Shown here: in pieces, positions 31,949-52,700 of the stretch
Position numbering within the stretch: the first letter of the stretch is position 1
Layout: every line of letters starts with the position of its first letter
Notes under the pieces: generated by a model
Seen by the model: the letters and a program-made list of their open reading frames with translations, nothing else
What the model was told of the DNA's origin: nothing
The model's database searches: none
Program-made: the position numbers and the translations under genes
Assembly: GCA_900088475.1 (NCBI GenBank)
Contig: FLMG01000335.1
Span: 1 to 64,000 of the forward strand
DNA: 64,000 nt
Direction: 5' to 3'
Source of the DNA: Hyphochytrium catenoides
Taxonomy: Eukaryota > Protista > Hyphochytriomycota

Positions 31949-34900
31949 CTAGAAGCGACTGATGTCTCTCCCGAAGATGAAGGTCTTCGTCCAATGCATG
32001 AAGATGAGAAACTTGTTCCGCCAGGAGACCTTTCGGAAGAACGCAATAACGAAGAAGGGGTATTTCTCAGTGTTGTTCTGCTGGAGACTGAGCCTCTTTG
32101 ATAAAAGTTGACGCATGACACACAGATAACAATTGGCCCCAGCGCCCTCAGCAACATTTCTTTGCAAGGCTTCTTTTTTGCCATCGTACCTGCTTGCTGA
32201 AATACGCTGACCTCCATAGCAGAAAAGCGAATCTTCCTGCACCGCTCCATTTCGCGTCCCCTAAGTCGACAAGTGCTCGGTAACCACCTTTAAAAAGGAA
32301 TAAGGAGTTAGTCTTCGCTGTAGAGCAAAATTGAAGGGGAAAGGTTGCAACACGAACAGGTCTCCCCTTAATCACTTGATTAAAAAAGAATATAAACGGA
32401 TAGACGAGGGAAGAAGAATAGAGAGACGAAGCTACCGAAGGAAGAAAGACAACTTGAGAAGTAGGCAAAGGCGACCTAAGAGAGAAGAGAACACCCAGAT
32501 TGCTGAGTGAGGCTAGAGCCTACCGATATAGGTCATCATTCCCGCATGCTGGTAGTCGAAAGGTTTGAAGTGCTCCGGAGTTAGGTCCACAGGAGAGCTG
32601 TTAAATAACTTGGCCAAGTATTTTCCTTTTCTTTCTGCCACCTGGGCCGTCGCTGCCAACAATCATGACCGATGCGTAGGTGCCATAAGGGAGAGCACGG
32701 TTAGGAGGCCCAGGACTTTGAAAAGTACTTTCTTCAGCAAAAAGCGGCCTTTATCCACGCCAGATTGGCAAACCTTGGACCTCTTACTTTCCTCCAACCT
32801 GCCCATACTATCAACATTACCGAACTTCACTCCCTGCAGGAGCCACATACTGTCCACAACGCTGAGGAACTTACGTGCTAGGGAGTGTTCCTCAATTGTA
32901 GCGCAATCTCCGATCGCAAAAATGTTACTGTGTCCTTTTACTCGGAGATATTCATCCGTCAGTAGCCGCCCTGCGAAACATTGGACGCGTGAGCAGTCGA
33001 TAGGCGCTGCGGACAGCGAGTGACAAGGACGACCTTAAATGGCGATAGTACCAAAAGGAACCACTGCGGATGCTCAATTTAGGGATACGTCTTCTATGAC
33101 AAGATTGACCATAAATTTACACGGTGTTCCTACAATGATAGGCCCTGCATACCATGAGAATCTTTCTCGAAATCCAGTCCCTGTATAAAGGGCCGAGGTG
33201 CCACCCCCGTGCTCCACACGCAGAGGCCAAAGGGCATTCTTTCTCCGTTAGACAGAACAATCTCCTTCGCCTGTGCATGTAAACCACACACAAACCCAAT
33301 GTACAAGTGGGAAACAGCAAAAGAATTAGGGCGTTGCCTAGTAGGGACTGACAGGAAGGATGTCGATAGCCAGATGCTTACCGTGACCTCCTTGACTGCC
33401 ACTTTAGTGCGGACATTGATGTTTTGGCGAGCGAAGTAGGTACTGGTGTAGTCAATCTAGAATACGGAGAAAGTCATAAAGAAGTAAGCCACAAAGGCTA
33501 TAAGGCAATGAAGTATAGCTGAAAAGTCTCAGTAGCTTCACTTTAGCAGTCACTTTGCTGTGCCCCCTACGAGTAAGTCTTACCAGTCCCTTGTTGAACA
33601 TCCCAAGCATGTGCTCTGAGGCTTCAATGAGCGTGATCTGGATTAGAGGTGAGAGCTCGGGAAAGGCCTTGCGAAGATCCTACGTAGAGAGAATGGACAC
33701 GTAGGCAATTATCGACTGGCTGCTAGTGCGAATAACATGTTGTTAAGAGTCACAGGGTCACTGATTACCTGCATAATGAAATCATGCAACTCAGCGGCGA
33801 ACTCTACGCCAGTTGGTCCACCTGGTTTGCAGACGACGTCAGTCTCTTTCATGCGTATCTAGCTTGTCACCAAATCTAACCCGCTCCAGTAGTGGTTGTT
33901 GCACGGTATCTATAAGACCGATACTATCAAAAGGGATTGCTTACCGCCTACAATGACGAAGTGCATTGCTCTCTTTCTGAACTCTTCAGTCGCCTCAGGA
34001 TAGCTCGCGTCCTCGAAACATTCAATGATCTTTCTCCTGATTTGTCTGGCGTGAGAGAGCTCCTTCAGGAAAAAGGCATGCTCCTCTACCCCAGGGATAT
34101 TGAAAGTATTTGTGCGGGCTCCAACAGCAACCACAAGCTTATCGTACGGGATCCTAAGGAACAGCCACGAGGAGGTGACGTCAACCGACCAGTATCGAGA
34201 AGAGACGCAAAGGTTTGGCCCGGGGTTGAGAAGGGAAATCAAAGGGAACTAGCAGGAGCTGTCCCCCATTCCAGAAGATGGCAAAGCCAGGGTTGTCAAC
34301 CGCATCCAAAATATTGTCTGTGCCTCCCTGTTATACGTCTGCTGATGCTTCCATCCTTTGTGGCAGGATTACCTCTTGGTATTGAGACCCTCTTCGAACC
34401 AGTCAGCATTGATCAGCACCTCTTGATTCTCGGTGTCAATTGCTTGAGCATATGCCATGTGATAACGAGCGCCCTTGCTATGTATGGAGTTCAAGGGGTT
34501 AGAATGTCGTGCAGCTCTTCTGAACGACTTCATTTCCAGTCATCTCCTATCTTCATCTATACTGATTCCTCCTGGAATTATACTCTTCACTACAGTGCAC
34601 CTTCTACGTCTCTGCTCCGTGCTATATCTCTGTCGGGCGGCAGTGTCCCAGACAACTCCCATACTTACTGAGCTTTCCTAGCAGGCTCCACGATACTCCG
34701 AAACTCTAAGGTACCGGTAGCGGTTGACGGGAGAAGAGGAGTGAATAGATAGTGGTTCCTGGGAGAGATCAACAGCACGTCATAACGCTTCGTATCGATG
34801 TCCAGGAAGGCTCTGAACCCACCCCAGCCTGAGCCGAGGATGACAACCCTTTCCCGCAAAGGCCTTAGACGTTGAGGCTTCGACTTCACCTCTTGCTTGG

Positions 34901-35036
34901 CAGGGGATTTAGTGGCACGTGGGGAGGCACTGTCGGGTGTAGAGGATACTTCAGCCTCTACTGCCACGGCAGCCTTTTGGTGCTGCCATCGCAGCTGACG
35001 AAGAGGTAAGCGCGGTTTAATTGCCCTGCCCAACAT
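31949..35036 (-). CDS. Type II (alternative, non-proton-pumping) NADH:ubiquinone oxidoreductase, NDA-like, mitochondrial
   Basis: Presequence-like N-terminus, [53 protein letters not shown]|[37 protein letters not shown] and C-terminal IFGRDISRF*. No EF-hand insert seen. Confidence 0.95.
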
Positions 35037-36941: not shown

Positions 36942-39900
36942 TCAGCTTCTTGATTCTGCTTTCTTTCTTATAAGAAGTCTCTCAAAACTTCTTGTCCAAA
37001 TGCTTGCCGCATGTGACCAAGAAAACTTGGCACGAGAAGACTTTTTCATGGCATCACGTTGCCTGCTCAGGTCCTGGCCGTAGGCAACAACAATAGAATC
37101 TACCCATTCCTTCACCCACTCCTGCTCTGGTTTGTCTTGAATAGAGAATGGAGAAAAAGAAAGCGGGAGGGGTTCGGTCGTGAGCTACAATCAGACAGAA
37201 GGCAAGACAACTTCCTAGAGATTGAGCTCATATGTAGTATCGAAGATCCAAACATAGACAGAGAGGGGATAGGGTTTCTAACAACCAATGGGACTGCTCT
37301 CCTTGCCATCAGAAGGCCCAGAACTCTGAAAAGGGAGCCACCACCTCGATAACTAAAAGGGCCAGGGAAGACAAATAGAGAAATGACTAGACGTTTGAGA
37401 AACAAAGCCGGAAGCGGAAACGGATGAGGTTTTGGATGATATTGAGCAAAACTTCGAGAAGGAGGAGAACTACCGGCGACGAGTCTGATCTCGGATGGTC
37501 CCATATCATAAGCACCGGTCAGTTCCGGTAGGACGGAGTTTGAATACCGGCTCGTGATCGGAATTGCTCCCATAGCTAATGCTTTCATGAGTGAGACGCA
37601 GCCTGGTGTTGCATGCCATAGAGAAAGAGTGGAAGTCACGCTTGGAGTCCGAAGAGCAAAGGGAGAGCCGAGCAATAACGGAGAATCCACCTGCACCCTC
37701 ACAACCGTCCGCCGTCAATTATTCAGACCTCTTATTGCTGAGGGTCACTTCTGGAGTCTATGCCTGCATCCATCTCTCCTCTTCTCCCTCCGCCTTTCTA
37801 CCAGCCCTTTTTAGCTTCGCGTTCCCCATGGAGTCAGCTTGGACAAGTTTACGTCCATGGACCAACTCACCTGTCTCGGGATATGTGGTCGGATAGAGAG
37901 AGAATCCGGCAGTGGCATAACCTTGTGCCAAATCGTCATGAGATACGAGACCCAGGTAACGGACCCCTTTCTGTCTGAGCAGTTCGTCCATTTCTGCTCT
38001 CCATTGTAAGTAATTAGGGATCTGGGTTCGGGCATATTTTTCGAAGGCAGGGGTGAAGCCATAATATACCTACCACCACGACGAGAGAGAGGGACGTAAA
38101 ATGAGTTTTGCAGATCAGGAGTCATACTAGCATTGGCAGCGAGGAAAACCCCGGACAATGTCAGAGCTCTCTGAGAGACCATTGACGCACGAGATCGAGA
38201 GTGCAAGATGCACCGACGTGCATACGTCGCAGTCTCCGAAGGGAATGAGGGATAAATTCAAAACAGTTTGTTGATGTTGAGAGAAGGGTCGAGCTCGTGC
38301 TGATGCCAAATGGGCCAGGGTACTCCATTTAGATTGCCGGAGACTTGTTTCAAAGGGAAGACAGACCATGCAACTCAGCATACCAGTAGTTCAGCATCGG
38401 GGATCTCTTTCGTGATGGCTCCCCAAGCCCGTAGTACTGTCTCCAACCCTCGATTGGGGGCGCTGCCGTATATGAAGACATTGTTCTTATTGAGTCCATC
38501 TCTGTAGTAGGACGGATTGAGTCCATTAGGAGCCACAAATGCTATATCTTTAACTGGAGGAGGCAACAATGAGAGAGCGAAGTGGCTGGGGACGACAACA
38601 CCATCGATCTGCACAAAGTATGGCGTCGCATTAGCTTAAGATAGTAAGGGTATCCGATATGGGTTCGGGTGGAGAGGACGGGAAGGTTCAGGCATGTCTT
38701 AATCGACGAGCTCTTGGGAGAAGTCTGGTTTATGCTAAAGGGAAGGGTGAGCGAGAGGTTTCCTTACCATGTTCCTGTTATCCGAGATCCATGTCATCTG
38801 ATCCACCACATCATGGAGCCAGAGGAGACGAATTTTGCTCTGCGCTCCCAGGGCCAAGGAGATGTAATACCGCCAGGCAATAAACACATCAACTAAGGAA
38901 GGGTCGAGTGTAGGGAGAGATAATAGAGGTAGCGTGGCAAAGCATTACTAGTATCCTTCCAGGAATGTAAAGTTAAGGTGAGAGTGATGCTGGAGAGGGT
39001 ATACTGAGAGGCACAGAAAGATCTCTAGGACACCAATCTTTAGGGACTAGGTGCATCACGAAGGTAGTGCTAGCTCAACCATTCAAAAAGGGAATAACTA
39101 CATAAAAATCGGGCAGTAGAGAAGAGTGTTTTTGCTTGTACGACTACAAGCGTTCTGATAAAGAACAAAATGCTTGACTAGGAAGATGAAGCTCCTGAAA
39201 CATATTAGGTCATCCCACCTGGCTGTCTAGTGTCATAGCTTTGATAGTTGTACCAAACAACGCCACTTTTAGGGTCCAATCCTCTCTCTGTCGCAGGAGG
39301 ACTGCCATACACCTCCACCCAGTAGCCAGCCTCCACGAGTGCGCCTGCCAAGAAAATTACAGCCTCTTCGCTACCTCCAATGCCTGTGTCTATTGAGCTC
39401 GGACCCCACTCGGTCCACCTGAACAAAGAAATGCTGTCATGAATTGCTTCGTGCGTTGATAGTTCAACCCAGTGCTTCTGAACTGTCATTACAACGGTAT
39501 GTCGCTCACCATTCGTTGCCATATTGATGGCAGTACAGGCCGACTGTCACTTTTCCTTTAGGTCTGCTCACTCGTTGGGTTTGCTCTCTCCATTTCATGA
39601 ATCCTCGTTCATTCTCTGCCTTCACAGTGGATAAAGAAAGAGAAGTAGAGAGAGACGCTTGGCCTAAATCCCTATAAAGGGCAGCCAGATTGTAGGCCGC
39701 TTCATAGTTCTCGGGGTACTGGCGGACAATACTTTCCAGTGCATTACGTGCCTGCTCAGATTTGTTCAGCAAACAGAGGCATAGCATAGCTTTAGTCTCA
39801 ATGGTTGCTGTCCATCATTGTCAGGTATATTGCTTATCGCCAGCTTTCGCCCGTCCCGTCCATCTCTCTCCTCCGTCGCACAATGTAAGGAATGCAACAC

Positions 39901-42900
39901 TGCCATGTGGGTTCTCTATTGTTGAGCGCCTATCTCAATTTTCTCTCGTTGCTTCTTGGCAAGCTGCGTTCTCGGTCTCACCTCCTCTTTTCTCGATAAT
40001 GCCAGTAGAGCTAGAGCATATCGAGAGTGATACTTCGCGTGAAAATCTTCGGCTACGGTTGACGCAAGGGACGGATGCTTGTTGTACAAAGCTGCAGCAA
40101 AAATTGCAAACACAAGCAGACCAGGTCAACATGAAGCAACGGAGTAGCTACCGCAGGTAGAAGCGTTGAGCTTGGTACGAGCCTACCGATCATACTCTCA
40201 TGGTCCTTGACAAGCGCAAAAATCACACTAAGAGCCACTATCGCAGGTGCAGCATCTGGCACGACCTCTACCAAGTAGGAGTACTAGGACAACGGCGGAC
40301 ATAAGCAAAGAAATAGTTTAGTGTTATGGGCATTTAAACAAGCCCGCTACCGCTGGTGGACCATCAGTGAGCAAAAGGTAATGGCAATTGATAGGGGCCA
40401 AAAAGAGACCGGTAGGTTGGTTACCTTTCTGCTTTCATCATCAATGGTTGTCGTCTTCTGAAGAGCTAGGGCTAGGTTGGTATAGTAGTGCGGGAAGGTA
40501 TGGTCCAATGTAAGAGCATGCTCTAGAAATTCTCTGCTCTCCTGGTATCTCTCCCTCCTAAGAGGCGATTGACAACGCAGGTTGCGATGAGACAAGACCA
40601 AGGACTAACCAAAGGGGGCTGTCAAGCCAAGTTGAAGAAGAGTGGATACGACTTTGCAGGCCCAAAAAATAAGCAAGGCATGGGGGCACACTTACTTGAA
40701 CTCAATTATCCCTAACACTTCCCATCCTTCCGAGTCATCTGGTCTCACTACCGTGTACCTCCGGCAAGCTGCGACTGCTCGGTGAAGATTCTTTCCTTCG
40801 TTGAACTGGTAGAGTTTAAGGAACTATGGTAGCTCTTAGACCCCACTAGAACTTTCCGTATAGAGGAAACAGGGTAATACGAGCGGAAGGCAGTGCTGGG
40901 GACAAAAACAGATAATAAGGAAATGACAGCTGTCAAGGCAAACGGGACCTTAGAGGAATCAATCTAGTTTGACAACTCACATGCACATCTCGAAGCACAC
41001 TTACCCTAGCCAGAACCGTGTCAGATCGCTCTTTTTGGATGGCATCATTCATCCTCACCCTTTCCTCACTATCACCCAGGTGCATGCTTATGTGGCGGAG
41101 TGAGTTCCCTGCCCTGTCTCCTCTCGGCAGATCACGCACTTCCGTTTGCCTCCGCAAGGTGAGCCTATCCTGACGCCAGTGCCAAGCTTCCCACATAGCT
41201 TGGTATGACTTCAAGTCGAATGAGCCAGCAAGAACAAAAGTTCGTGACGTAATTAAGGTCTGTAAGAATGCGAGAGGGGTGTCGTAGAGCCTAACTAAAA
41301 TATCTAGGCGGTGATAGATCGCAGAACCAGCGACTACTTCCCTTCTGGGACATTGTTTCAACAGTGATGACCGGAAAAACATTGAATACTTCTCCCTTGG
41401 AGGATCCTTATACAGATTCTTCCTTACCGCCTCAATCTCTTTAATGGTCCTCTCAGTAGAAAAGTGCGGGGATGAGATCAGTCCTTTTGCCACCTTTTCT
41501 CTCATTTCTAGAAGGGCATGTTTCCCTTGCTCGCGTCCCAAGCCTACAGCAACTTCCTCATAGTCCTTCAGACTATGCACCACCAGCTCGCTTAAGTTCA
41601 GCTGCCTGAGAAAGCTAGCTGCTACTCGGGAATGAAAGGTTTCTCCTGTGACGTGCGGTTAGAGCTCAGTGTGTGAAACATTGAAAGACCAAGTGGGGGA
41701 CATGAAAGAAACGAATTGACAACCGGTTGTGTATGTCAGAGTGCAGAGCACAAACCTCCAAAAAAAATAGACATCAGGATTGTAAAGTAACTAATAGTGT
41801 CAGCATACAGCCGCTGAGAAACGCGCCAGGAAAATAGGTCAAGCAATAGAAAGTGCGGCAAAATAGTGCTTGGTGCACCTTCTAGGGTAACAATAGGCAC
41901 AAATGCCCACAGCGCGTCTGAGGCAGTAGTATGTGCAGTGTAAATGAGAGTGTCCAGAAACAGATCGCAGAAGCCGAGCCTTTCCAGATGTTCCTCCCGA
42001 GGGAGCGAGGGAGAAAATAGTATCCGCTTTGGGTCGACACCTCTCGATGCAGCCTCAGCATGAAGATTCTTGATGAGGGGCTCAACTTTTGGAAGTGATG
42101 GCTGAAGGAGCCAGAGGACGCTCCCGGGCACTCTACGAAGCACTAAAGGTAGGTTTAGTAGGGGAGCCAAACCACTACACGTCGCACGGCAGAGTGATGG
42201 GCATAGTGCTCCGCCTGTAAGCTTACCATTCATCCAGAGTGTGAAGGACGTTGGTTCCAGCTTATTAAGAGTATTAAAGTTGCAATAGACGGTCGAGGCA
42301 CTCGCAGGGATACTCCAGGCATGTCGCTGGCCTTCCTGTAGTAAGGAAGGCAAACAAGAAAGTGACGATCGGAGGGGCGGAAAGTAAAGAAGGAAGAGAG
42401 TGCCGTTAGGATTTTGGAAAGCCTCAAACCTACCAGGACTATGTAGAGCCATGAGTCCTAGGAGTGAAGACTATTCAGAGATACCTTTCTGCAGGTATCA
42501 TTGGTATAACAGGACGGTACATGCCAGGGGTAGTCATTCACTTGATAGCTCTGAGGAAGGTAGACCACTTTCTCTGTAACCGAGTATGCCTCTTCCCCCG
42601 GGATAACAGCAGCGGACGCTAGCAGAAAGTCCATGAAGGTGGACCCAGAGGTACCAGGATAACCTAGGTAGTTCACTAACAGCCGTCCCGGTTTTAGCGC
42701 TGTGAGAGTGTACCTAAGAAGGAAGCCAAACAGGTTCAAGAGTGACTGAGATCGGTATATATAAAGTCCAGACAGAGTTAGTGTTGCCCTTACGAGAGAA
42801 AGTTGCGCATGTTGAAGGCAGGTAGAAAGAACAGAGGTGCGACATGGTTCAGTGAGTAGAGTGTTGTTGGCCTGGCATAGATAAGCGAATGATAAGGATG

Positions 42901-45306
42901 GATGAACACGATCGATGAGGCTGAGCAAAAGTAGAAGATTGGAGGAGAGGGAGAAACGTAGGCGTTCCTTGGGCCACCGAGACGCCGGTTTTACCTAGAT
43001 CCTCTGGTGTGTACCATAAGGTCCACCACGATATCAAAGTCACGCTCCGCAGCCGCTTTGGCTGCGTCTAAGTCTCCCATGACTTCCAAATCCATAAAGA
43101 GATCACTATTTTTTTCAACTTTCATCCTCCATTCAGAACCATCGTTAGGTCCATAAGAAAGAGCGGAGACAAAAAAGCTCGTGCGATTGTGCTCTTCGAA
43201 GAGGCGCGACGTAAGCTGGCCCATGGGATGAGTTCTAAAGTCAAAGCTGAGATAACCCAATCGGAGGACTCTCCTGCTACTCAGGGTCTCCGATGAAGGC
43301 TCGGGCAGATCTACCTGCTTGATATTCCTGGAGAGACGAAAATGGATCATTAACTGGTTTGGCGGGGTTACTAGTGTACGCCAGCAGAAAGGTCGCCATG
43401 GAGATGAAGAGCGATGACGTGGGACGACCGAGGGTTTCATTCTACAAACGGATGACTACTTGCCCCTTGCCTATAAAATAGTCCTAGCGTCTAGGAATCG
43501 ATCATTCCGGTTCTGCCATTGCAGAGTCGTCTTACCAGGGTGTCGCCATGGCTGGAATAAGAAGTGATAATTTCTTGTTACTAAGAGGCATCAGGAGGGT
43601 CTCGTACGGCATAAGAGCCGGTGCTTTATGGGCAGCGACCGAAGAGTCTGCCCTCACAACGGTCGTCAGCAGTAGACAGAGCAGGAAAGAGAGAACGCAA
43701 GATAGCAACGTGAAGGTGTCGCAGACAATTAGACTCAAGGAGTAGCAAGAGATCACTTTAGACTCAAGAAGTAACAAAGATCATGTGAGAAAAGCAGCAG
43801 CAAGAAATGGACCTAGGTAATCTAGCAAAGGAAATGGCAGCACCAGACAAGTCCAGCAGAGTATCTGTCCACGCTTCAAAGTCCTTCCAATACCAAGAGT
43901 TACGCATGGCAGTATGGAGCACATAGATCGAACTCCCTTCTGGGCGCAGCTCAACCGCTTTGAAGTTCATCTGTAAAGCACCGAGAACATCACCCGCGTC
44001 TCTGTTCGGCGAGGATCCCCAGAAGCGATAAGGTCAGGAAGAGCTTTAACGACAATGAATCATCACAGCTGAAAAAGGAACAACCATTGGGCAAGAAATT
44101 GCAGACAAAACATCTCGTTTTTAAAAGATTTGACGGGCAAGCCCTCTGTTCAGATGTACGAGCTGACCTCATATACTGTCCGATGTTGCCATATGCCGCC
44201 ATACGGATATGCAAGGGCACCGACTCGCTGGTTGCAACCACCAGCGTGTACTCAATGGCCTTCTTCGTATCTTTGCTAGCAAAATTTCTTGTCAATTTAT
44301 GTCTGTCCATCTCTGAAGAGCGCTCTCTTACCGGTAGAACCAGTTGATACCCAGATTGAGGTAAGCGTTGGCAGAAGTAGGATCTATCTCAATTGTCTAT
44401 GTAGGTTTGCGCGGCAAGAGGAGAAAGGCATTAAGAAGGGTTGGACAGAAAGCATGCGGGGATGTTGACAGCGAGCTAGCATTTCCACCTTTTCTAGAAG
44501 GTCATGCGCAGCAAGATAGTTGCCCATGCGCTGCAGAGTGGAAGCTTTATTATATAGAGCATTTGAACTATTCTGGTCCTGTGGAACAAAAAGGTTGAGG
44601 TTAAAGAGAGGTCGAGACCTTCATCGCTTAAGCGCTGCAGATTGGCTGGCTAGAAGGCCCGAACTGAACCGTGGAGGCAGACTTGCACAGTGGAATAGGT
44701 AGACAAGAAAGACTGGCAAGATCCCGTCCTTACCTCCTTCAACGCGAGGTCGAAGGCTTCATCGGCAGCGCGCAGTGCCACGAGGTCCTTGCCCCCCAAA
44801 GTTAGGTATGCGTGCCCAATGCCGTTGTAGGCGACTGACCGCTCACTGGCCGTGCTAGCCAACGTCACAGCTTTGTTGAATGCCTCCAAAGCTCTCGTCA
44901 AGTCTGCTAACCCCACGTAGGCATTGCCTATCCCAACGTAAGCATTGGACTTGTCTCCATTTATCTTTTGAAACTGCAATAGAGGCGTTAAACTCTTCTG
45001 ATGACGAAGAGACTTTCGTTGTGCATTGAACTGCCTCACCTTCTGGAACTCTTGCAATGCAAGCTCGTATTTGCCCTCCTCTACGGCCAGGTGGGCTTGG
45101 GCTAGAAGCTCCTCAGAATACCCATTTGCCAACCCCAAGCCAGCTTGTACCTTCCCATTTACCAGAGCATGAAGCACGAGTATGAGACAGAATGCACGAC
45201 AGATGTTATAGCACGGTCCATGGTGTTTATGTGCAGAAGTGCTAGATGGGGCAGATCTACTAAGGTTGTTTGGCATGATTCTCCTCAACACGGGAGGAAA
45301 CCTCAT
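36942..45306 (-). CDS. Signal/TM - TPR - GT41 (OGT/SEC-type) - TPR - GT4-like glycosyltransferase fusion, many exons
   Basis: GT41 motifs: RLGYLSFDFRTHP, DIVVDLMVHTRG, NYLGYPGTSG, VYCNFNTLNKL, LRRVPGSVLWLL, DLFLDTL.YTAHTTASDALWA. A phase-0 intron at 41004-40824 links these to further TPR exons and a GT-B domain (GIGGSEEAVIFL, LLWLHDV, PNGL, FIYGSAPNRGL, YPTTYPET|GCVSLMKALAMGAIPITS, FSWSHAASIW). Domain calls are firm; the single-gene model is inferred. Confidence 0.8.
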
Positions 45307-49729: not shown

Positions 49730-52700
49730 ATGGAGGCTGAGAGGAACGGTCACGATGATGATGGCCCCTCATCAGTTCGCTTCCAGGAGTTTCCTGTCAC
49801 ACCAGATCTCCAAGTCAGGTCCCCAGATGAGGACCTTATGACAGTAAGTTCGGACTACCTGTGAGAGCAATCCCTATTTGTCATTATAAACCACCATACC
49901 AAGCTTTCTTTATCGAGCGTCTTTTACCATTCTCCTTGCGTAGTTCCGTAACTCATGTTCACCTCCCCGACCTTTTTATTTGTCAGCCTGAGCTAGGCTG
50001 CAGCTCTCGAAGGCTCGGTAGCCCCATTCAATGTGCTGATGAGAACGATTTCAGAGTCGTCCATGTCAACAACCCGTCAGCCAATGAGGAGCAGCGTTTT
50101 TGTTCAAATGTCGTCATCACATCGAAGTACACCCCAGTTACCTTTGTGCCCAAAATCCTGTTTTTGGAGTTTAGCAAGCTCGCCAACGCGTACTTCCTCG
50201 TCGTGTCCATCCTTCAAACCATTCCTCTTATCTCCAACACTGGTGGCTATCCAGCATCACTACCCACTCTCATCATCATTATCATGGTTGATGCGATCTT
50301 TGCTGCAATGGAGGATATTAAGCGGCATAAAGCGGACGACATTTGTAACAATCAGACAACTTGCAGGGTATGGACTGCTACAAGTACTGGGTTTATGGTG
50401 GCCGGTTCCTTCCCACTTTTTTCCGCTTCCTTATAACTTTCCCATATAAATCCTCATCAGGGCGACTCATCTAACGATATCTTTTCAATCTATCGATGCC
50501 TCTTAGTTAAACCCTTCCACCGGAGAGTTTGACACGACCAAATGGATTGATGTCAAGGTCGGTGATATCCTCAAAATCAAGAACCACGAGGACATCCCGG
50601 CAGATGTCCTCATCTTGGCAGTAGACGAGGATCCAGAGCGACCACCAACTGGCATCTGCTACGTGGAGACTAAGAGTCTCGATGGTGAGACTAACCTCAA
50701 ACTTCGCCAGGTAATTGGGCATATATTGAAACAGAACTTGTATTTGTGCCCTGTAACCACGGCCTTTCTACCAGGGAGTCGAATGTACCTATTCCTCGGT
50801 CCGTACCGCAGCGGACTTATTAGCACTTAAAGGAAGGCTTGTGTGTGAGAAGCCGAACAACGCTATTCACAAGTTTACAGGGCTGTTTCATCATGATAAC
50901 ACGGGGACGGAAGAGGTCGTATCCCACACAGCAGTCCTTCTTAGGGGTTGTTCCCTACGCAACTCCAACTATATTTATGGACTCGTTTTCAACACGGGGG
51001 GTAAGTCAAGCCCCTGATGGCAAACCTATGCCCAAAGTGTTTATAGTCATTCCTTTCTTCTCCCACTCTTTGGTAACACTTATTGTGGATGATGATTAGA
51101 CGACACCAAGATTATGATGTCAGTTGACGCTCCGCCAACAAAGTGGAGCACCTTAGAGAAGAACATCAACGTGACGATCAAGTGCATTGTCGCTGTCATG
51201 TTCTTTCTCTGCGTGTTCGCAGCCTCCCTCTCTTTGTATTTCAACCTTACCTACCTCAAGAACACGAAGGTAGATGCGAATGTTCTGTCCGCACTAAGAT
51301 TTTTCAGTCCTGCTTGTCTCGTTTCTGCCCCAGCTTTCCTGCTTGCGCGTCCAAAGTTCACTGCATTTATGCATTGATTGCAAGATTTATATTCTCTTAT
51401 GGCCTTCATTCTGTTCGTCCCTGTCATTGCCTTCTGGGTGCCAGTGGTAAAGAGCTAAAGGCCTTCCTCATCGTATCACCAACAGGAAAATGCGTGGTAC
51501 CTCCCGGTCCCCAACAAAGATTTTGTCCGCGCTCCGGCCGGACAATTCTTTGTTGATATGGTTTATTTCTTCCTCCTGATGAACCAGTTTATTCCTATCT
51601 CTCTCTATGTGTCCATGACATCTATTAAATTTCTGCAGTCGTACTTTCTGGTGCAGGTGAGTTGACCTGCTATAAACGCCTATATTCTGTGTTATTGCCT
51701 GGCACCGTTGCTCTACCCTCTTGACCTATCGCGATTTTGCCGAGCTTGGGGTTGTTCTCTACGACCTTATCTCTCTTGGCGCGACTGGCTAATGCTAACT
51801 CTGCGTTGGACGTTGTTTCTACGCTTGGCGTCTTTGGTGCTATCTTTCTCTCACCTAACTCTTCACTATTGCCAAAATAGTCGTCCCGTCTGTAGATACT
51901 CTCACTGACGCTTTTACATAGGATGTCGAAATGTATCATGAGGAGACCGACACACCGGCCCTCTGTAGGACTATGGCTCTTAACGAAGAGTTGGGCCAGA
52001 TTGACTATATTTTCTCGGATAAGACCGGAACCCTGACATGCAATATTATGGAATTTCGGAAGTTGTCCGTCAATGGCGTCTCTTATGGGAAAGGTACCAC
52101 CGAGATCGGGCGAGCGGCCCAGAGAAGGCAAGGAATCGAACTCGCAGCGGACCCAATGGCTGGTAGTACGAGAATCCAGGTTGGCCTCTTGATGGGTTTC
52201 CTGTCTTTCATAAAAAATCGAGTTCCCAGCGCGTTTCTGGAATATACCGGTGACTCTGACTCTTTGTTAATGCCTCTTCCTGTATATCATCCGCAGGCGC
52301 CGTATGTCAATTTTGATGATAGCTCCTTCTTGCGCGATCTGGAAGGAGAGTCGGGAGAAGAACAACGAAAGAAGCTGCAAGAGATGCTGGAACATCTCTC
52401 CGTCTGTCACACAGTGATTCCGGAAAATGTTGAGGGAGAAGGAGTGCGCTTGTCAGCTTCTTCCCCTGATGAGCAAGCGCTGGTGGCTGGAGCAGCAGCC
52501 TTAGGCTACGAGTTCTACCGCCGCGCTCCAGGAGAAGTGTGGATTCGAGTAAGAGGCAAAAGCGTCAAATACGAGGTGCTGGATGTTTTGGAGTTTAACT
52601 CGACGAGGAAGCGAATGTCTGTGATCATCAGGACTCCTGAAGGGAAGGTTAAACTACTCTGCAAGGTAAGGCTGCGAGCCCCACTGTCCGCTGAGCTTGG

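What the first reader, a model, noticed from the sequence alone, without database searches (positions are those of the whole stretch)
36942..45306. Candidate secretory-pathway bifunctional glycosyltransferase: OGT-type GT41 fused to a second TPR array and a GT4-like enzyme
Seen: a complete GT41 catalytic region ends ...DTVLAR|gtaag (41004) and splices in phase 0 to FLKLYQFNEG...DDSEGWEVLGIIEF (from 40823). More TPR exons and a GT-B domain (GIGGSEEAV, GSAPNRGL, YPETGCVSLMKALAMG) follow. Only about 110 bp separate the unspliced stop (40933) from that exon, and I see no convincing new start, so two separate genes are unlikely. Established: OGT/SEC/SPY are normally stand-alone TPR+GT41 enzymes that add a single, unextended sugar. 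Inference: one polypeptide could prime Ser/Thr with GlcNAc and then extend it, with each catalytic domain having its own TPR substrate module. That would be a protein O-glycosylation system I do not recognise from described enzymes.
Basis: partly seen in the sequence, partly recalled or inferred. Interest (0 to 1): 0.85.

Follow-up and report, generated by a model that had tools for sequence, protein, structure and literature searches.

The report
Secretory OGT-type enzyme fused to GT4-like enzyme
This is one real gene for a two-enzyme sugar-adding protein with an export signal; the same fusion occurs across stramenopiles (water moulds, brown algae and relatives) and sits in public databases labelled only "O-GlcNAc transferase", and no functional study of it was found in the library searched.

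Summary
On the minus strand, 45306 to 36942, 23 GT-AG exons give one open frame of 1441 aa. Its order is N-terminal hydrophobic signal or anchor, TPR array, OGT-type GT41 domain, about 58 aa of linker, a second TPR array, then a GT4-like GT-B domain. The disputed junction (donor 41004, acceptor 40824, phase 0) is an ordinary 181-nt intron.

No RNA run was available, so the splice is not shown directly. Homologues settle it. About 88 proteins of 930-2500 aa have the same architecture, and every named one is a stramenopile. Hondaea encodes all 1440 aa in one intronless ORF. In Pythium, Saprolegnia and Aureococcus the GT41-to-TPR2 junction lies inside a single exon. In DNA runs of what appear to be other strains or haplotypes, every frame-breaking indel falls in a predicted intron.

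Both catalytic domains keep their conserved residues. An N-terminal hydrophobic segment occurs in 51 of 75 family members, against 1 of 62 other GT41 proteins, so a secretory-pathway location is likely.

"Prime then extend" is plausible but untested. The family is already in databases under automatic names. I found no paper describing it.

The parts
36942..45306 (-). Whole coding region: 23 exons, 1441 aa. Exons, high to low: 45306-44734, 44578-44489, 44396-44332, 44275-44168, 44001-43813, 43652-43536, 43327-42995, 42713-42485, 42335-42227, 42142-41879, 41645-41428, 41208-41005, 40823-40696, 40557-40425, 40283-40187, 40091-39982, 39796-39510, 39418-39219, 38892-38768, 38608-38384, 38069-37871, 37602-37474, 37135-36942.
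   Evidence: all introns are GT-AG (56-338 nt), there is no internal stop, and the length is a multiple of 3; collinear with homologues from N- to C-terminus; non-3n indels between DNA runs fall only in predicted introns. The exon 5/6 and exon 16/17 boundaries are uncertain; alternative splice sites change a few residues.
45157..45204 (-). N-terminal hydrophobic segment (aa 35-50, ICRAFCLILVLHALVN), preceded by a basic stretch: a signal peptide or a type II signal anchor.
   Evidence: Kyte-Doolittle maximum 2.9 over an 11-residue window. A comparable segment occurs in 51 of 75 full-length family members, against 1 of 62 other GT41 proteins.
43813..45130 (-). First TPR array (exons 1-5).
   Evidence: TPR_1 and TPR_8 hits in exon 1; aligned with the N-terminal TPRs of homologues.
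41179..43652 (-). GT41 catalytic domain, OGT type (exons 6-12, aa about 342-775). It has no metazoan-style intervening domain.
   Evidence: PF13844 at 45.3 and 81.6 bits on single exons; the orthologue's domain matches OGT structures at 5e-68 and SPINDLY at 4.5e-37; motifs DFRTHP, GYPGTSG, NFNTLNK, EEH and HTTASD are present.
41005..41178 (-). Linker (aa 776-833) between the GT41 domain and the second TPR array, in the 3' part of exon 12.
   Evidence: it aligns with the variable linker of the fused homologues, including the conserved R-x-H/L-hydrophobic-x-P patch.
40824..41004 (-). Intron 12, the disputed junction: 181 nt, GTAAGT...CCATAG, phase 0 to phase 0.
   Evidence: 3 SNPs and a 1-nt indel (40865) between DNA runs, as in the other introns; the distances to the nearest neighbouring ORFs are about 1.9 kb and over 4 kb, far longer than 181 nt.
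39640..40823 (-). Second TPR array (exons 13-17, aa 834 to about 1040).
   Evidence: sub-threshold TPR hits on exons 13, 14 and 17; aligned with the TPR_12/TPR_16 region of the Pythium orthologue (aa 800-960).
36942..39568 (-). GT4-like GT-B glycosyltransferase domain (aa about 1066-1441, 3' part of exon 17 to exon 23, stop codon at 36944-36942).
   Evidence: 46-66% identity to homologues exon by exon; the orthologue's domain folds with pLDDT 95, and all top structural matches are GT4 enzymes; all 14 invariant and 25 of 26 near-invariant family residues are kept.

Best explanation
The locus is one 23-exon gene. It encodes a 1441-aa bifunctional glycosyltransferase: N-terminal signal peptide or anchor, TPR array, OGT-type GT41 domain, linker, second TPR array, GT4-like GT-B domain. 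It is the orthologue of a family found throughout stramenopiles.

Shown here:
- the continuous frame;
- the conserved fused architecture;
- the integrity of both catalytic cores;
- the family-specific N-terminal hydrophobic segment.

Inferred:
- The protein enters the ER and works in the ER or Golgi lumen. I put this at about 0.7.
- The GT41 domain (an inverting family; the UDP-binding residues as I recall them from human OGT are retained) transfers a sugar to Ser/Thr of protein substrates held by a TPR array. The sugar may be GlcNAc, but this is unproven.
- The GT4-like domain (a retaining family) adds a second, alpha-linked sugar, either onto the first sugar or onto other sites of the same substrates. 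I put strict 'prime then extend' at about 0.35.
For: Gene model: 23 GT-AG exons, 1441 codons, no stop; aligned across the junction with 12 homologues.

Fusion in other genomes:
- 94 hits, about 88 of which carry PF13844 plus the C-terminal domain.
- Pythium oligandrum TMW60248.1 has aa 1-1359 in one ORF.
- Hondaea fermentalgiana encodes all 1440 aa in one intronless ORF.
- Saprolegnia aa 319-958 and Aureococcus aa 1-801 each lie in one exon.
- further brown algae and chrysophytes.

Polymorphism: 10 frame-breaking indels all lie in predicted introns. The only exonic indel is 6 nt.

Neighbours: gaps to the nearest ORFs are kilobases long, against 181 nt for intron 12.

GT41 domain.

GT4-like domain.

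Signal segment: (51/75 against 1/62).

Related fusions: the same GT4-like module follows TPRs in fusions with GT2, methyltransferase and GT32-like domains. This fits a role in multi-step glycan building.
Against: - There is no transcript evidence for this genome. No RNA run was listed, and the runs laid were DNA only, with no joints.
- The window's own protein was not found in the protein collections, so the model rests on homology.
- Location is inferred from hydrophobicity alone. No signal-peptide predictor was available, and 24 of 75 homologues lack the segment. These may have truncated models, but that was not checked.
- No enzymatic datum exists for any family member, so donor sugars, acceptor and order of action are open.
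- The second Glu of the GT4 EX7E motif is Lys in the whole family. OGT's Q839 and K898 equivalents are T and R here. Donor specificity may therefore differ from the textbook enzymes.
Confidence: 0.8

Rival explanations
1. There are two adjacent genes in this genome. A TPR-GT41 gene ends at the stop at 40933. A separate TPR-GT4-like gene starts downstream. This would be a lineage-specific fission.
For: The unspliced frame reaches a stop 71 nt after 41004. Stand-alone GT4-like proteins with N-terminal extensions, some with TPR hits, exist elsewhere, for example Guillardia theta at 548 aa (no Pfam hit in Guillardia itself). No RNA evidence was available.
Against: The exon at 40823 has a stop immediately upstream in frame and contains no Met. 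The 181-nt gap has consensus GTAAGT/YAG ends like the other 21 introns. The gaps to the nearest neighbouring ORFs are about 1.9 kb and over 4 kb. The linker in exon 12 is homologous to the linker of the fused proteins. All four other lineages examined encode the junction inside one exon.
Confidence: 0.04
2. It is one gene, but the two domains do not act in sequence on one glycan. They may modify different sites or substrates. Alternatively, the enzyme may build a polysaccharide or glycolipid of the cell wall or extracellular matrix rather than a protein O-glycan.
For: GT4 enzymes act on lipids, sugars, small molecules and proteins; the top structural matches are SPS, MshA, PimA, BshA and PIG-A. 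Each catalytic domain has its own TPR array, which could mean separate substrates. JGI names some homologues 'glycosyltransferase involved in cell wall biosynthesis'. Brown-algal GT41 genes have been discussed as matrix-polysaccharide candidates, though not favoured (PMC11468063).
Against: All characterised GT41 enzymes named in the papers read here modify proteins (PMC11468063). TPR arrays are protein-binding modules. A stable fusion across the roughly 88 homologues found usually marks steps of one pathway, which is an inference.
Confidence: 0.3
3. It is a membrane-tethered but cytosol-facing OGT-like enzyme. The N-terminal hydrophobic segment only anchors the protein, and the catalytic domains modify nucleocytoplasmic proteins as classical OGT/SEC does.
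For: Characterised OGT, SEC and SPY are nucleocytoplasmic (established knowledge; PMC9715652 and PMC10027727 abstracts). The GT41 domain is closest to metazoan OGT.
Against: In the window protein the basic residues lie on the N-terminal side of the segment, so the positive-inside rule puts the C-terminal bulk in the lumen. Most oomycete orthologues have a short, classical signal-peptide-like start at residues 1-25. GT41 proteins are counted in predicted oomycete secretomes (PMC4316629).
Confidence: 0.12

Closest known systems
Metazoan/plant O-GlcNAc transferase (OGT/SEC, CAZy GT41; e.g. PDB 3PE3, 5A01)
   Same: A TPR array is followed by a GT41 GT-B catalytic domain. It is the best sequence match among solved structures (5e-68 for the orthologue's domain). 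The motifs carrying OGT's His498, Lys842, His901, His920-Thr921-Thr922 and Asp925 equivalents are present (numbering is from my own knowledge of human OGT).
   Different: It has an N-terminal signal or anchor segment and no intervening domain. The Q839 and K898 equivalents are T and R. About 660 further residues follow, with a second TPR array and a second glycosyltransferase. OGT is nucleocytoplasmic and adds a single sugar.
SPINDLY protein O-fucosyltransferase (GT41; PDB 7Y4I, 8DTF)
   Same: TPR plus GT41 architecture, and a protist/plant distribution.
   Different: A clearly weaker match (4.5e-37 against 5e-68). A survey of brown-algal GT41s found none of them close to plant O-FucT, and their donor sites favour a UDP-sugar (PMC11468063).
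Multi-module GT41 proteins (2-5 TPR-GT41 units, some with a sulfotransferase) in the protein library
   Same: A GT41 domain is followed on the same polypeptide by another TPR array and another transferase. So 'GT41 followed by TPR and a second enzyme' is a recurrent design.
   Different: The second enzyme there is another GT41 or a sulfotransferase, not the GT4-like domain. Only 1 of 62 has an N-terminal hydrophobic segment. Their organisms are unknown.
Retaining GT4 glycosyltransferases (sucrose-phosphate synthase 6KIH, MshA 3C48, PimA 2GEJ, BshA 6N1X, PIG-A/GPI3)
   Same: Same GT-B fold (Foldseek probability 1.0, TM 0.65-0.76). The N-terminal GGSE loop, the Arg of the S-x-P-x-R-G-L motif and the first Glu of EX7E are invariant or nearly so.
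   Different: Only 13-19% identity. Pfam GT4 models score below threshold on the Pythium orthologue (20.6 and 21.1 bits). The second Glu of EX7E is Lys. The domain is always preceded by TPRs and has no characterised close relative.
Other two-enzyme protein glycosylation fusions, e.g. Dictyostelium Skp1 GT2-GT74 (PgtA)
   Same: Two glycosyltransferase domains on one polypeptide add successive sugars to one protein-linked glycan (as summarised in PMC11468063).
   Different: It uses different GT families, is cytosolic, and has no TPR arrays. It is an analogy only.

Membership tests
CAZy GT41 / Pfam PF13844 (Glyco_transf_41) | Significant match to the family profile above the curated cut-off | tested here: met
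   45.3 and 81.6 bits on single exons against a cut-off of 25; 280.6 bits on the Pythium orthologue.
OGT/SEC subtype of GT41 (as opposed to SPINDLY) | Closer to OGT than to SPY in sequence | tested here: met
   on orthologue P0178 aa 280-720: OGT structures score 5e-68 to 1e-65, bacterial XcOGT 7e-50, SPINDLY 4.5e-37.
OGT/SEC subtype of GT41 | UDP-binding and catalytic residues (human OGT H498, K842, H901, H920, T921, T922, D925; list from my own knowledge) | tested here: met
   DFRTHP (aa 410), NFNTLNK (587), EEH (654) and HTTASD (675) are present in the window model. The Q839 and K898 equivalents are T and R. Positions were assigned by motif, not by a structural alignment to human OGT.
OGT/SEC/SPY as a biological system | Nucleocytoplasmic enzyme without a signal sequence | tested here: not met
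   an N-terminal hydrophobic segment is present in the window protein and in 51 of 75 family members, against 1 of 62 other GT41 proteins.
OGT/SEC/SPY as a biological system | Transfers a single GlcNAc (or fucose) to Ser/Thr | not testable with these tools
   Needs enzyme assays.
CAZy GT4 / Pfam PF00534, PF13692, PF13439 | Significant match to a GT4 profile | tested here: inconclusive
   Single window exons give no hit. The Pythium orthologue scores below threshold (20.6 and 21.1 bits against 26.4 and 27). Some homologues pass (P0247 at 32.2 bits, P0243 at 35 bits).
CAZy GT4 | GT-B fold closest to GT4 structures | tested here: met
   the model has pLDDT 95.1. The best-ranked matches are GT4 enzymes, with GT5 glycogen/starch synthases also in the list. 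Probability is 1.0 and TM 0.65-0.76.
CAZy GT4 | EX7E motif in the C-terminal Rossmann domain | tested here: not met
   the first Glu is invariant (E1333 in the window). The second position is a nearly invariant Lys (K1341) in the whole family.
Stramenopile TPR-GT41-TPR-GT4-like fusion family (database orthologues, e.g. UniRef A0A8K1CCR9, H3HC89) | Same domain order, end-to-end collinearity and conserved residues of the C-terminal domain | tested here: met
   (collinear). (14 of 14 invariant and 25 of 26 near-invariant residues, 48% identity to the Aphanomyces domain).

The most novel reading that the evidence does not exclude
Stramenopiles have a lineage-wide O-glycosylation pathway in the ER/Golgi lumen that is started by an OGT-type GT41 enzyme. 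That family is otherwise known in eukaryotes only from the nucleus and cytosol. The first sugar is immediately capped by a fused retaining GT4-like enzyme. This would give a protein-linked disaccharide core distinct from mucin-type, EOGT-type or plant extensin-type O-glycans, on secreted or surface proteins selected by the two TPR arrays.
Probability: 0.25. Interest if true: 0.75.

Novelty: new variant of a known kind. Interest (0 to 1): 0.55.

Why it matters
Eukaryotic GT41 enzymes (OGT, SEC, SPINDLY) are the textbook case of nucleocytoplasmic glycosylation with a single sugar. This family has an export signal and a second, different glycosyltransferase on the same chain. It is conserved across stramenopile lineages from labyrinthulomycetes and oomycetes to brown algae, pelagophytes and chrysophytes. 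That points to an undescribed lumenal glycosylation step in a group that includes major crop pathogens and major marine primary producers.

Two practical points follow. Database entries named 'protein O-GlcNAc transferase' in these organisms should not be read as evidence for a classical O-GlcNAc signalling system. And the intronless Hondaea gene offers a ready construct for biochemical tests.

Tried and rejected
- RNA evidence. The search for RNA runs listed none. A second search of any kind found only DNA holders and two 200-nt unspliced pieces in other runs. The splice could therefore not be observed directly.
- Word-based protein search with the 241-aa read-through ORF (40936-41658). It found nothing in the 133-422 aa range. 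The window's own protein never appeared in any search.
- Atlas search with one GT4-like exon. It gave only generic short glycosyltransferase-like clusters.
- Pfam on single exons of the second domain. It gave nothing. The domain was identifiable only through full-length homologues and structure.
- Two-gene reading. Rejected; see the rivals.
- SPINDLY-type reading. Rejected on relative scores.
- Plastid targeting of the signal. Considered and set aside, because plastid-less oomycetes and Hondaea have the segment too.
- Literature searches for GT41 with GT4, oomycete, signal peptide or Phytophthora. No description of the fusion was found. The Gene deFuser paper that matched the terms concerns another fusion.
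Full report
**1. What is in the sequence**

The window is eukaryotic and intron-rich. I read the minus strand from 45500 to 36800 and translated its three frames. The open segments carry, in this order:
- an N-terminal hydrophobic stretch;
- TPR-like repeats;
- pieces of a GT41 catalytic domain;
- more TPR-like repeats;

Pfam confirms TPR_1/TPR_8 in the first exon. It also confirms Glyco_transf_41 on two single exons, at 45.3 and 81.6 bits against a cut-off of 25.

- ...DTVLAR is followed by GTAAGT at 41004.
- The unspliced frame stops at 40935-40933.
- CCATAG ends at 40824.
- The next exon starts at 40823 in phase 0. A TAG lies directly upstream in that frame, and the exon has no Met.

**2. 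Gene model**

I placed splice sites by frame, by GT-AG ends and by tblastn alignments to homologues. This gave 23 exons from 45306 to 36942, or 4326 nt and 1441 codons with no internal stop. Introns are 56-338 nt. Intron 12 (41004-40824, 181 nt, GTAAGT...CCATAG) looks like the others.

Two boundaries are uncertain by a few residues: exon 5/6 and exon 16/17. Neither affects the question asked.

**3. Is it one gene?**

No RNA run could be listed. A second search found only DNA holders. When laid on 38300-44200 these gave no joints. Direct transcript evidence is therefore missing. Four independent lines replace it.

(a) *A collinear homologue.* A phmmer search of 1.84 billion representatives with the read-through ORF 40936-41658 returned 379 GT41 proteins. 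I laid all 150 listed hits back on the window. One of them, P0144, also matched the downstream GT4-like exons at 46-66% identity. P0144 is Pythium oligandrum TMW60248.1, UniRef A0A8K1CCR9. It is collinear with the whole window gene.

(b) *Uninterrupted coding in other genomes.*
- In the Pythium genome, aa 1-1359 lie in one uninterrupted ORF. That span covers both TPR arrays and both catalytic domains.
- Hondaea fermentalgiana, a labyrinthulomycete, encodes all 1440 aa in a single intronless ORF.
- In Saprolegnia, aa 319-958 lie in one exon. In Aureococcus, aa 1-801 do.
- The GT41-to-TPR2 junction therefore cannot be an annotation merge.

(c) *A large conserved family.* A search with the C-terminal region of P0144 found 94 proteins of 930-2500 aa. 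About 88 of them also carry PF13844. All the named ones are stramenopiles:
- oomycetes: many Phytophthora, plus Pythium, Globisporangium, Plasmopara, Lagenidium, Aphanomyces and Saprolegnia;
- a labyrinthulomycete: Hondaea;
- brown algae: Discosporangium, Scytosiphon, Cladosiphon and Nemacystus;
- Chrysoparadoxa;
- pelagophytes: Aureococcus, CCMP2097 and Chrysophaeum;
- Triparma;
- chrysophytes: Spumella and Pedospumella.

In a MAFFT alignment the window's exon 12 linker and exon 13 TPR align with the same parts of these proteins.

(d) *Within this genome.*
- DNA runs of what appear to be other strains or haplotypes differ from the window by eleven indels in the stretch laid. The ten that would break a frame all lie in predicted introns, including one at 40865 in intron 12. 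The single exonic indel is 6 nt.
- The nearest neighbouring ORFs look like an NDH-2-type dehydrogenase starting at 35036 and a P4-ATPase from about 49860. I judged both by eye from their translations. They are about 1.9 kb and over 4 kb away. A 181-nt intergenic region holding a terminator, a promoter and a start codon would be out of character for this locus.

I put the two-gene reading at about 0.04.

**4. The first catalytic domain**

The orthologous domain (Aphanomyces P0178, aa 280-720) was compared with solved structures:

| Solved structure | E-value |
|---|---|
| Drosophila and human OGT | 5e-68 to 1e-65 |
| Xanthomonas OGT | 7e-50 |
| Arabidopsis SPINDLY | 4.5e-37 |

The domain is therefore OGT-type. 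The window protein keeps DFRTHP, GYPGTSG, NFNTLNK, EEH and HTTASD. By my knowledge of human OGT, these motifs hold the equivalents of H498, K842, H901, H920, T921, T922 and D925. The Q839 and K898 equivalents are T and R. There is no metazoan intervening domain.

A survey of brown-algal CAZymes reports about ten GT41 genes per genome. It found none of them close to plant O-fucosyltransferase, and donor sites that favour a UDP-sugar. It does not mention this fusion (PMC11468063).

**5. The second catalytic domain**

- *Sequence.* By sequence it barely reaches solved GT4 enzymes. The best match is sucrose-phosphate synthase 6KIH at 7e-6.
- *Alignment.* A 47-sequence alignment (A1) gave 14 invariant and 26 near-invariant positions.
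- *Structure.* AlphaFold2 on that alignment gave a GT-B model with mean pLDDT 95.1 and pTM 0.92. The best Foldseek matches in the PDB and Swiss-Prot are retaining GT4 enzymes, with some GT5 glycogen and starch synthases also listed. They include SPS, MshA, PimA, BshA, GlgM, PIG-A/GPI3 and WaaK-type enzymes. Probability is 1.0, TM 0.65-0.76 and identity 13-19%.
- *Window protein.* It retains all 14 invariant and 25 of 26 near-invariant positions.
- *Family peculiarity.* The second Glu of the GT4 EX7E motif is Lys.
- *Other contexts.* The module also occurs alone or after an N-terminal extension, for example in Guillardia theta at 548 aa. It also occurs in other fusions: GT2 + TPR + this module + methyltransferase, and TPR + this module + a GT32-like domain. 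Several of these partners are themselves glycosyltransferases, which fits a module used in multi-step glycan assembly.

**6. Location**

The window protein has a hydrophobic stretch at aa 35-50, after a basic N-terminal region. Most full-length homologues start with a classical signal-peptide-like segment. I used a simple criterion: Kyte-Doolittle mean of at least 2.2 over 11 residues within the first 60 aa. By this, 51 of 75 family members are positive, against 1 of 62 other long GT41 proteins.

GT41 proteins are counted in predicted oomycete secretomes (PMC4316629). Plastid-less lineages share the segment, so it is not a plastid signal. A lumenal ER/Golgi location is the most likely reading, at about 0.7. 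It is inferred, not shown.

**7. How it most likely works**

Shown: one polypeptide with two apparently intact glycosyltransferase cores, each preceded by TPRs, and an export signal.

Inferred from family knowledge:
- GT41 is an inverting, protein-directed family whose characterised OGT-type members use UDP-sugars.
- GT4 is a retaining family.
- TPR arrays bind protein substrates.

The simplest mechanism is that the enzyme glycosylates Ser/Thr-rich secretory or surface proteins and adds two sugars. Or they could be added in parallel on the same clients. Donors, acceptors and order are open. Some GT4 enzymes are themselves protein O-GlcNAc transferases, for example GtfA of streptococcal serine-rich adhesins (my own knowledge). 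So even the order of action cannot be assumed.

**8. Comparison with what is known, and novelty**

The nearest GT41 domains in the library sit in proteins with two to five TPR-GT41 modules, one with a sulfotransferase.

The specific combination with a signal segment and a GT4-like domain is present in dozens of public entries, under automatic names such as 'protein O-GlcNAc transferase'. One JGI name already combines 'SPINDLY family' with 'glycosyltransferase involved in cell wall biosynthesis'. Six literature searches found no description or experiment on the fusion. The searchable library lacks most subscription journals, so this is not proof of absence.

I rate it a new variant of a known kind. 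The gene itself is an ordinary orthologue of a deposited but uncharacterised family. The family as a whole is an unstudied, probably lumenal, bifunctional relative of OGT.

**9. Verdict**

- Observation: confirmed.
- Single-gene interpretation: supported at about 0.95.
- Secretory location: likely.
- Mechanism: plausible but untested.
- Interest: 0.55. The finding is solid and points to an undescribed glycosylation step in a major eukaryotic group. But the architecture is already visible in databases, and nothing here establishes its chemistry.

Noticed in passing
Protein library hits P0001-P0040; P0009, P0015, P0016, P0018, P0019, P0023, P0025: There are very long proteins (1000-3500 aa) made of two to five tandem TPR-GT41 modules. 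One (P0016) ends in a sulfotransferase domain. Their organisms are unknown, and almost none has an N-terminal hydrophobic segment.
   Followed up: partly
P0230, P0234, P0236, P0240, P0243: The same GT4-like module occurs after TPRs in other multi-enzyme fusions. These include GT2 + TPR + module + methyltransferase, GT2 + TPR + methyltransferase + module, and TPR + module + a GT32-like (Gly_transf_sug/Gb3_synth) domain. All come from metagenomic or Logan contigs of unknown origin.
   Followed up: partly
L001:7078-8933 (Pythium oligandrum): The deposited Pythium model adds about 330 C-terminal residues after an 813-nt 'intron'. The other orthologues end where the window gene ends. The extension is probably a merged neighbouring gene or a mis-prediction.
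   Followed up: no
L001:9809-11933 and L003:5915-7367: In both Pythium and Saprolegnia the gene is followed, tail to tail, by a PHD/DDT/WSD chromatin gene. This synteny is conserved among oomycetes. The window has different neighbours.
   Followed up: no
window 38300-44200: Two DNA data sets of the same species label (X1, X2) differ from the window, and from each other, by many SNPs and small indels. These are concentrated in introns, which suggests different strains or haplotypes. One allele has a 6-nt in-frame deletion at 39786 in exon 17.
   Followed up: partly
window 33130-35036 (-) and 49861-50436 (+): By eye, the neighbouring ORFs look like an NDH-2-type alternative NAD(P)H dehydrogenase downstream (start at 35036, minus strand) and a P4-type ATPase (flippase) exon upstream on the plus strand.
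   Followed up: no
window 40933-41004 (-): If intron 12 were retained, the frame would run 23 codons further to a stop and give an 856-aa TPR-GT41 protein without the second enzyme. Whether such an isoform exists could not be tested.
   Followed up: no
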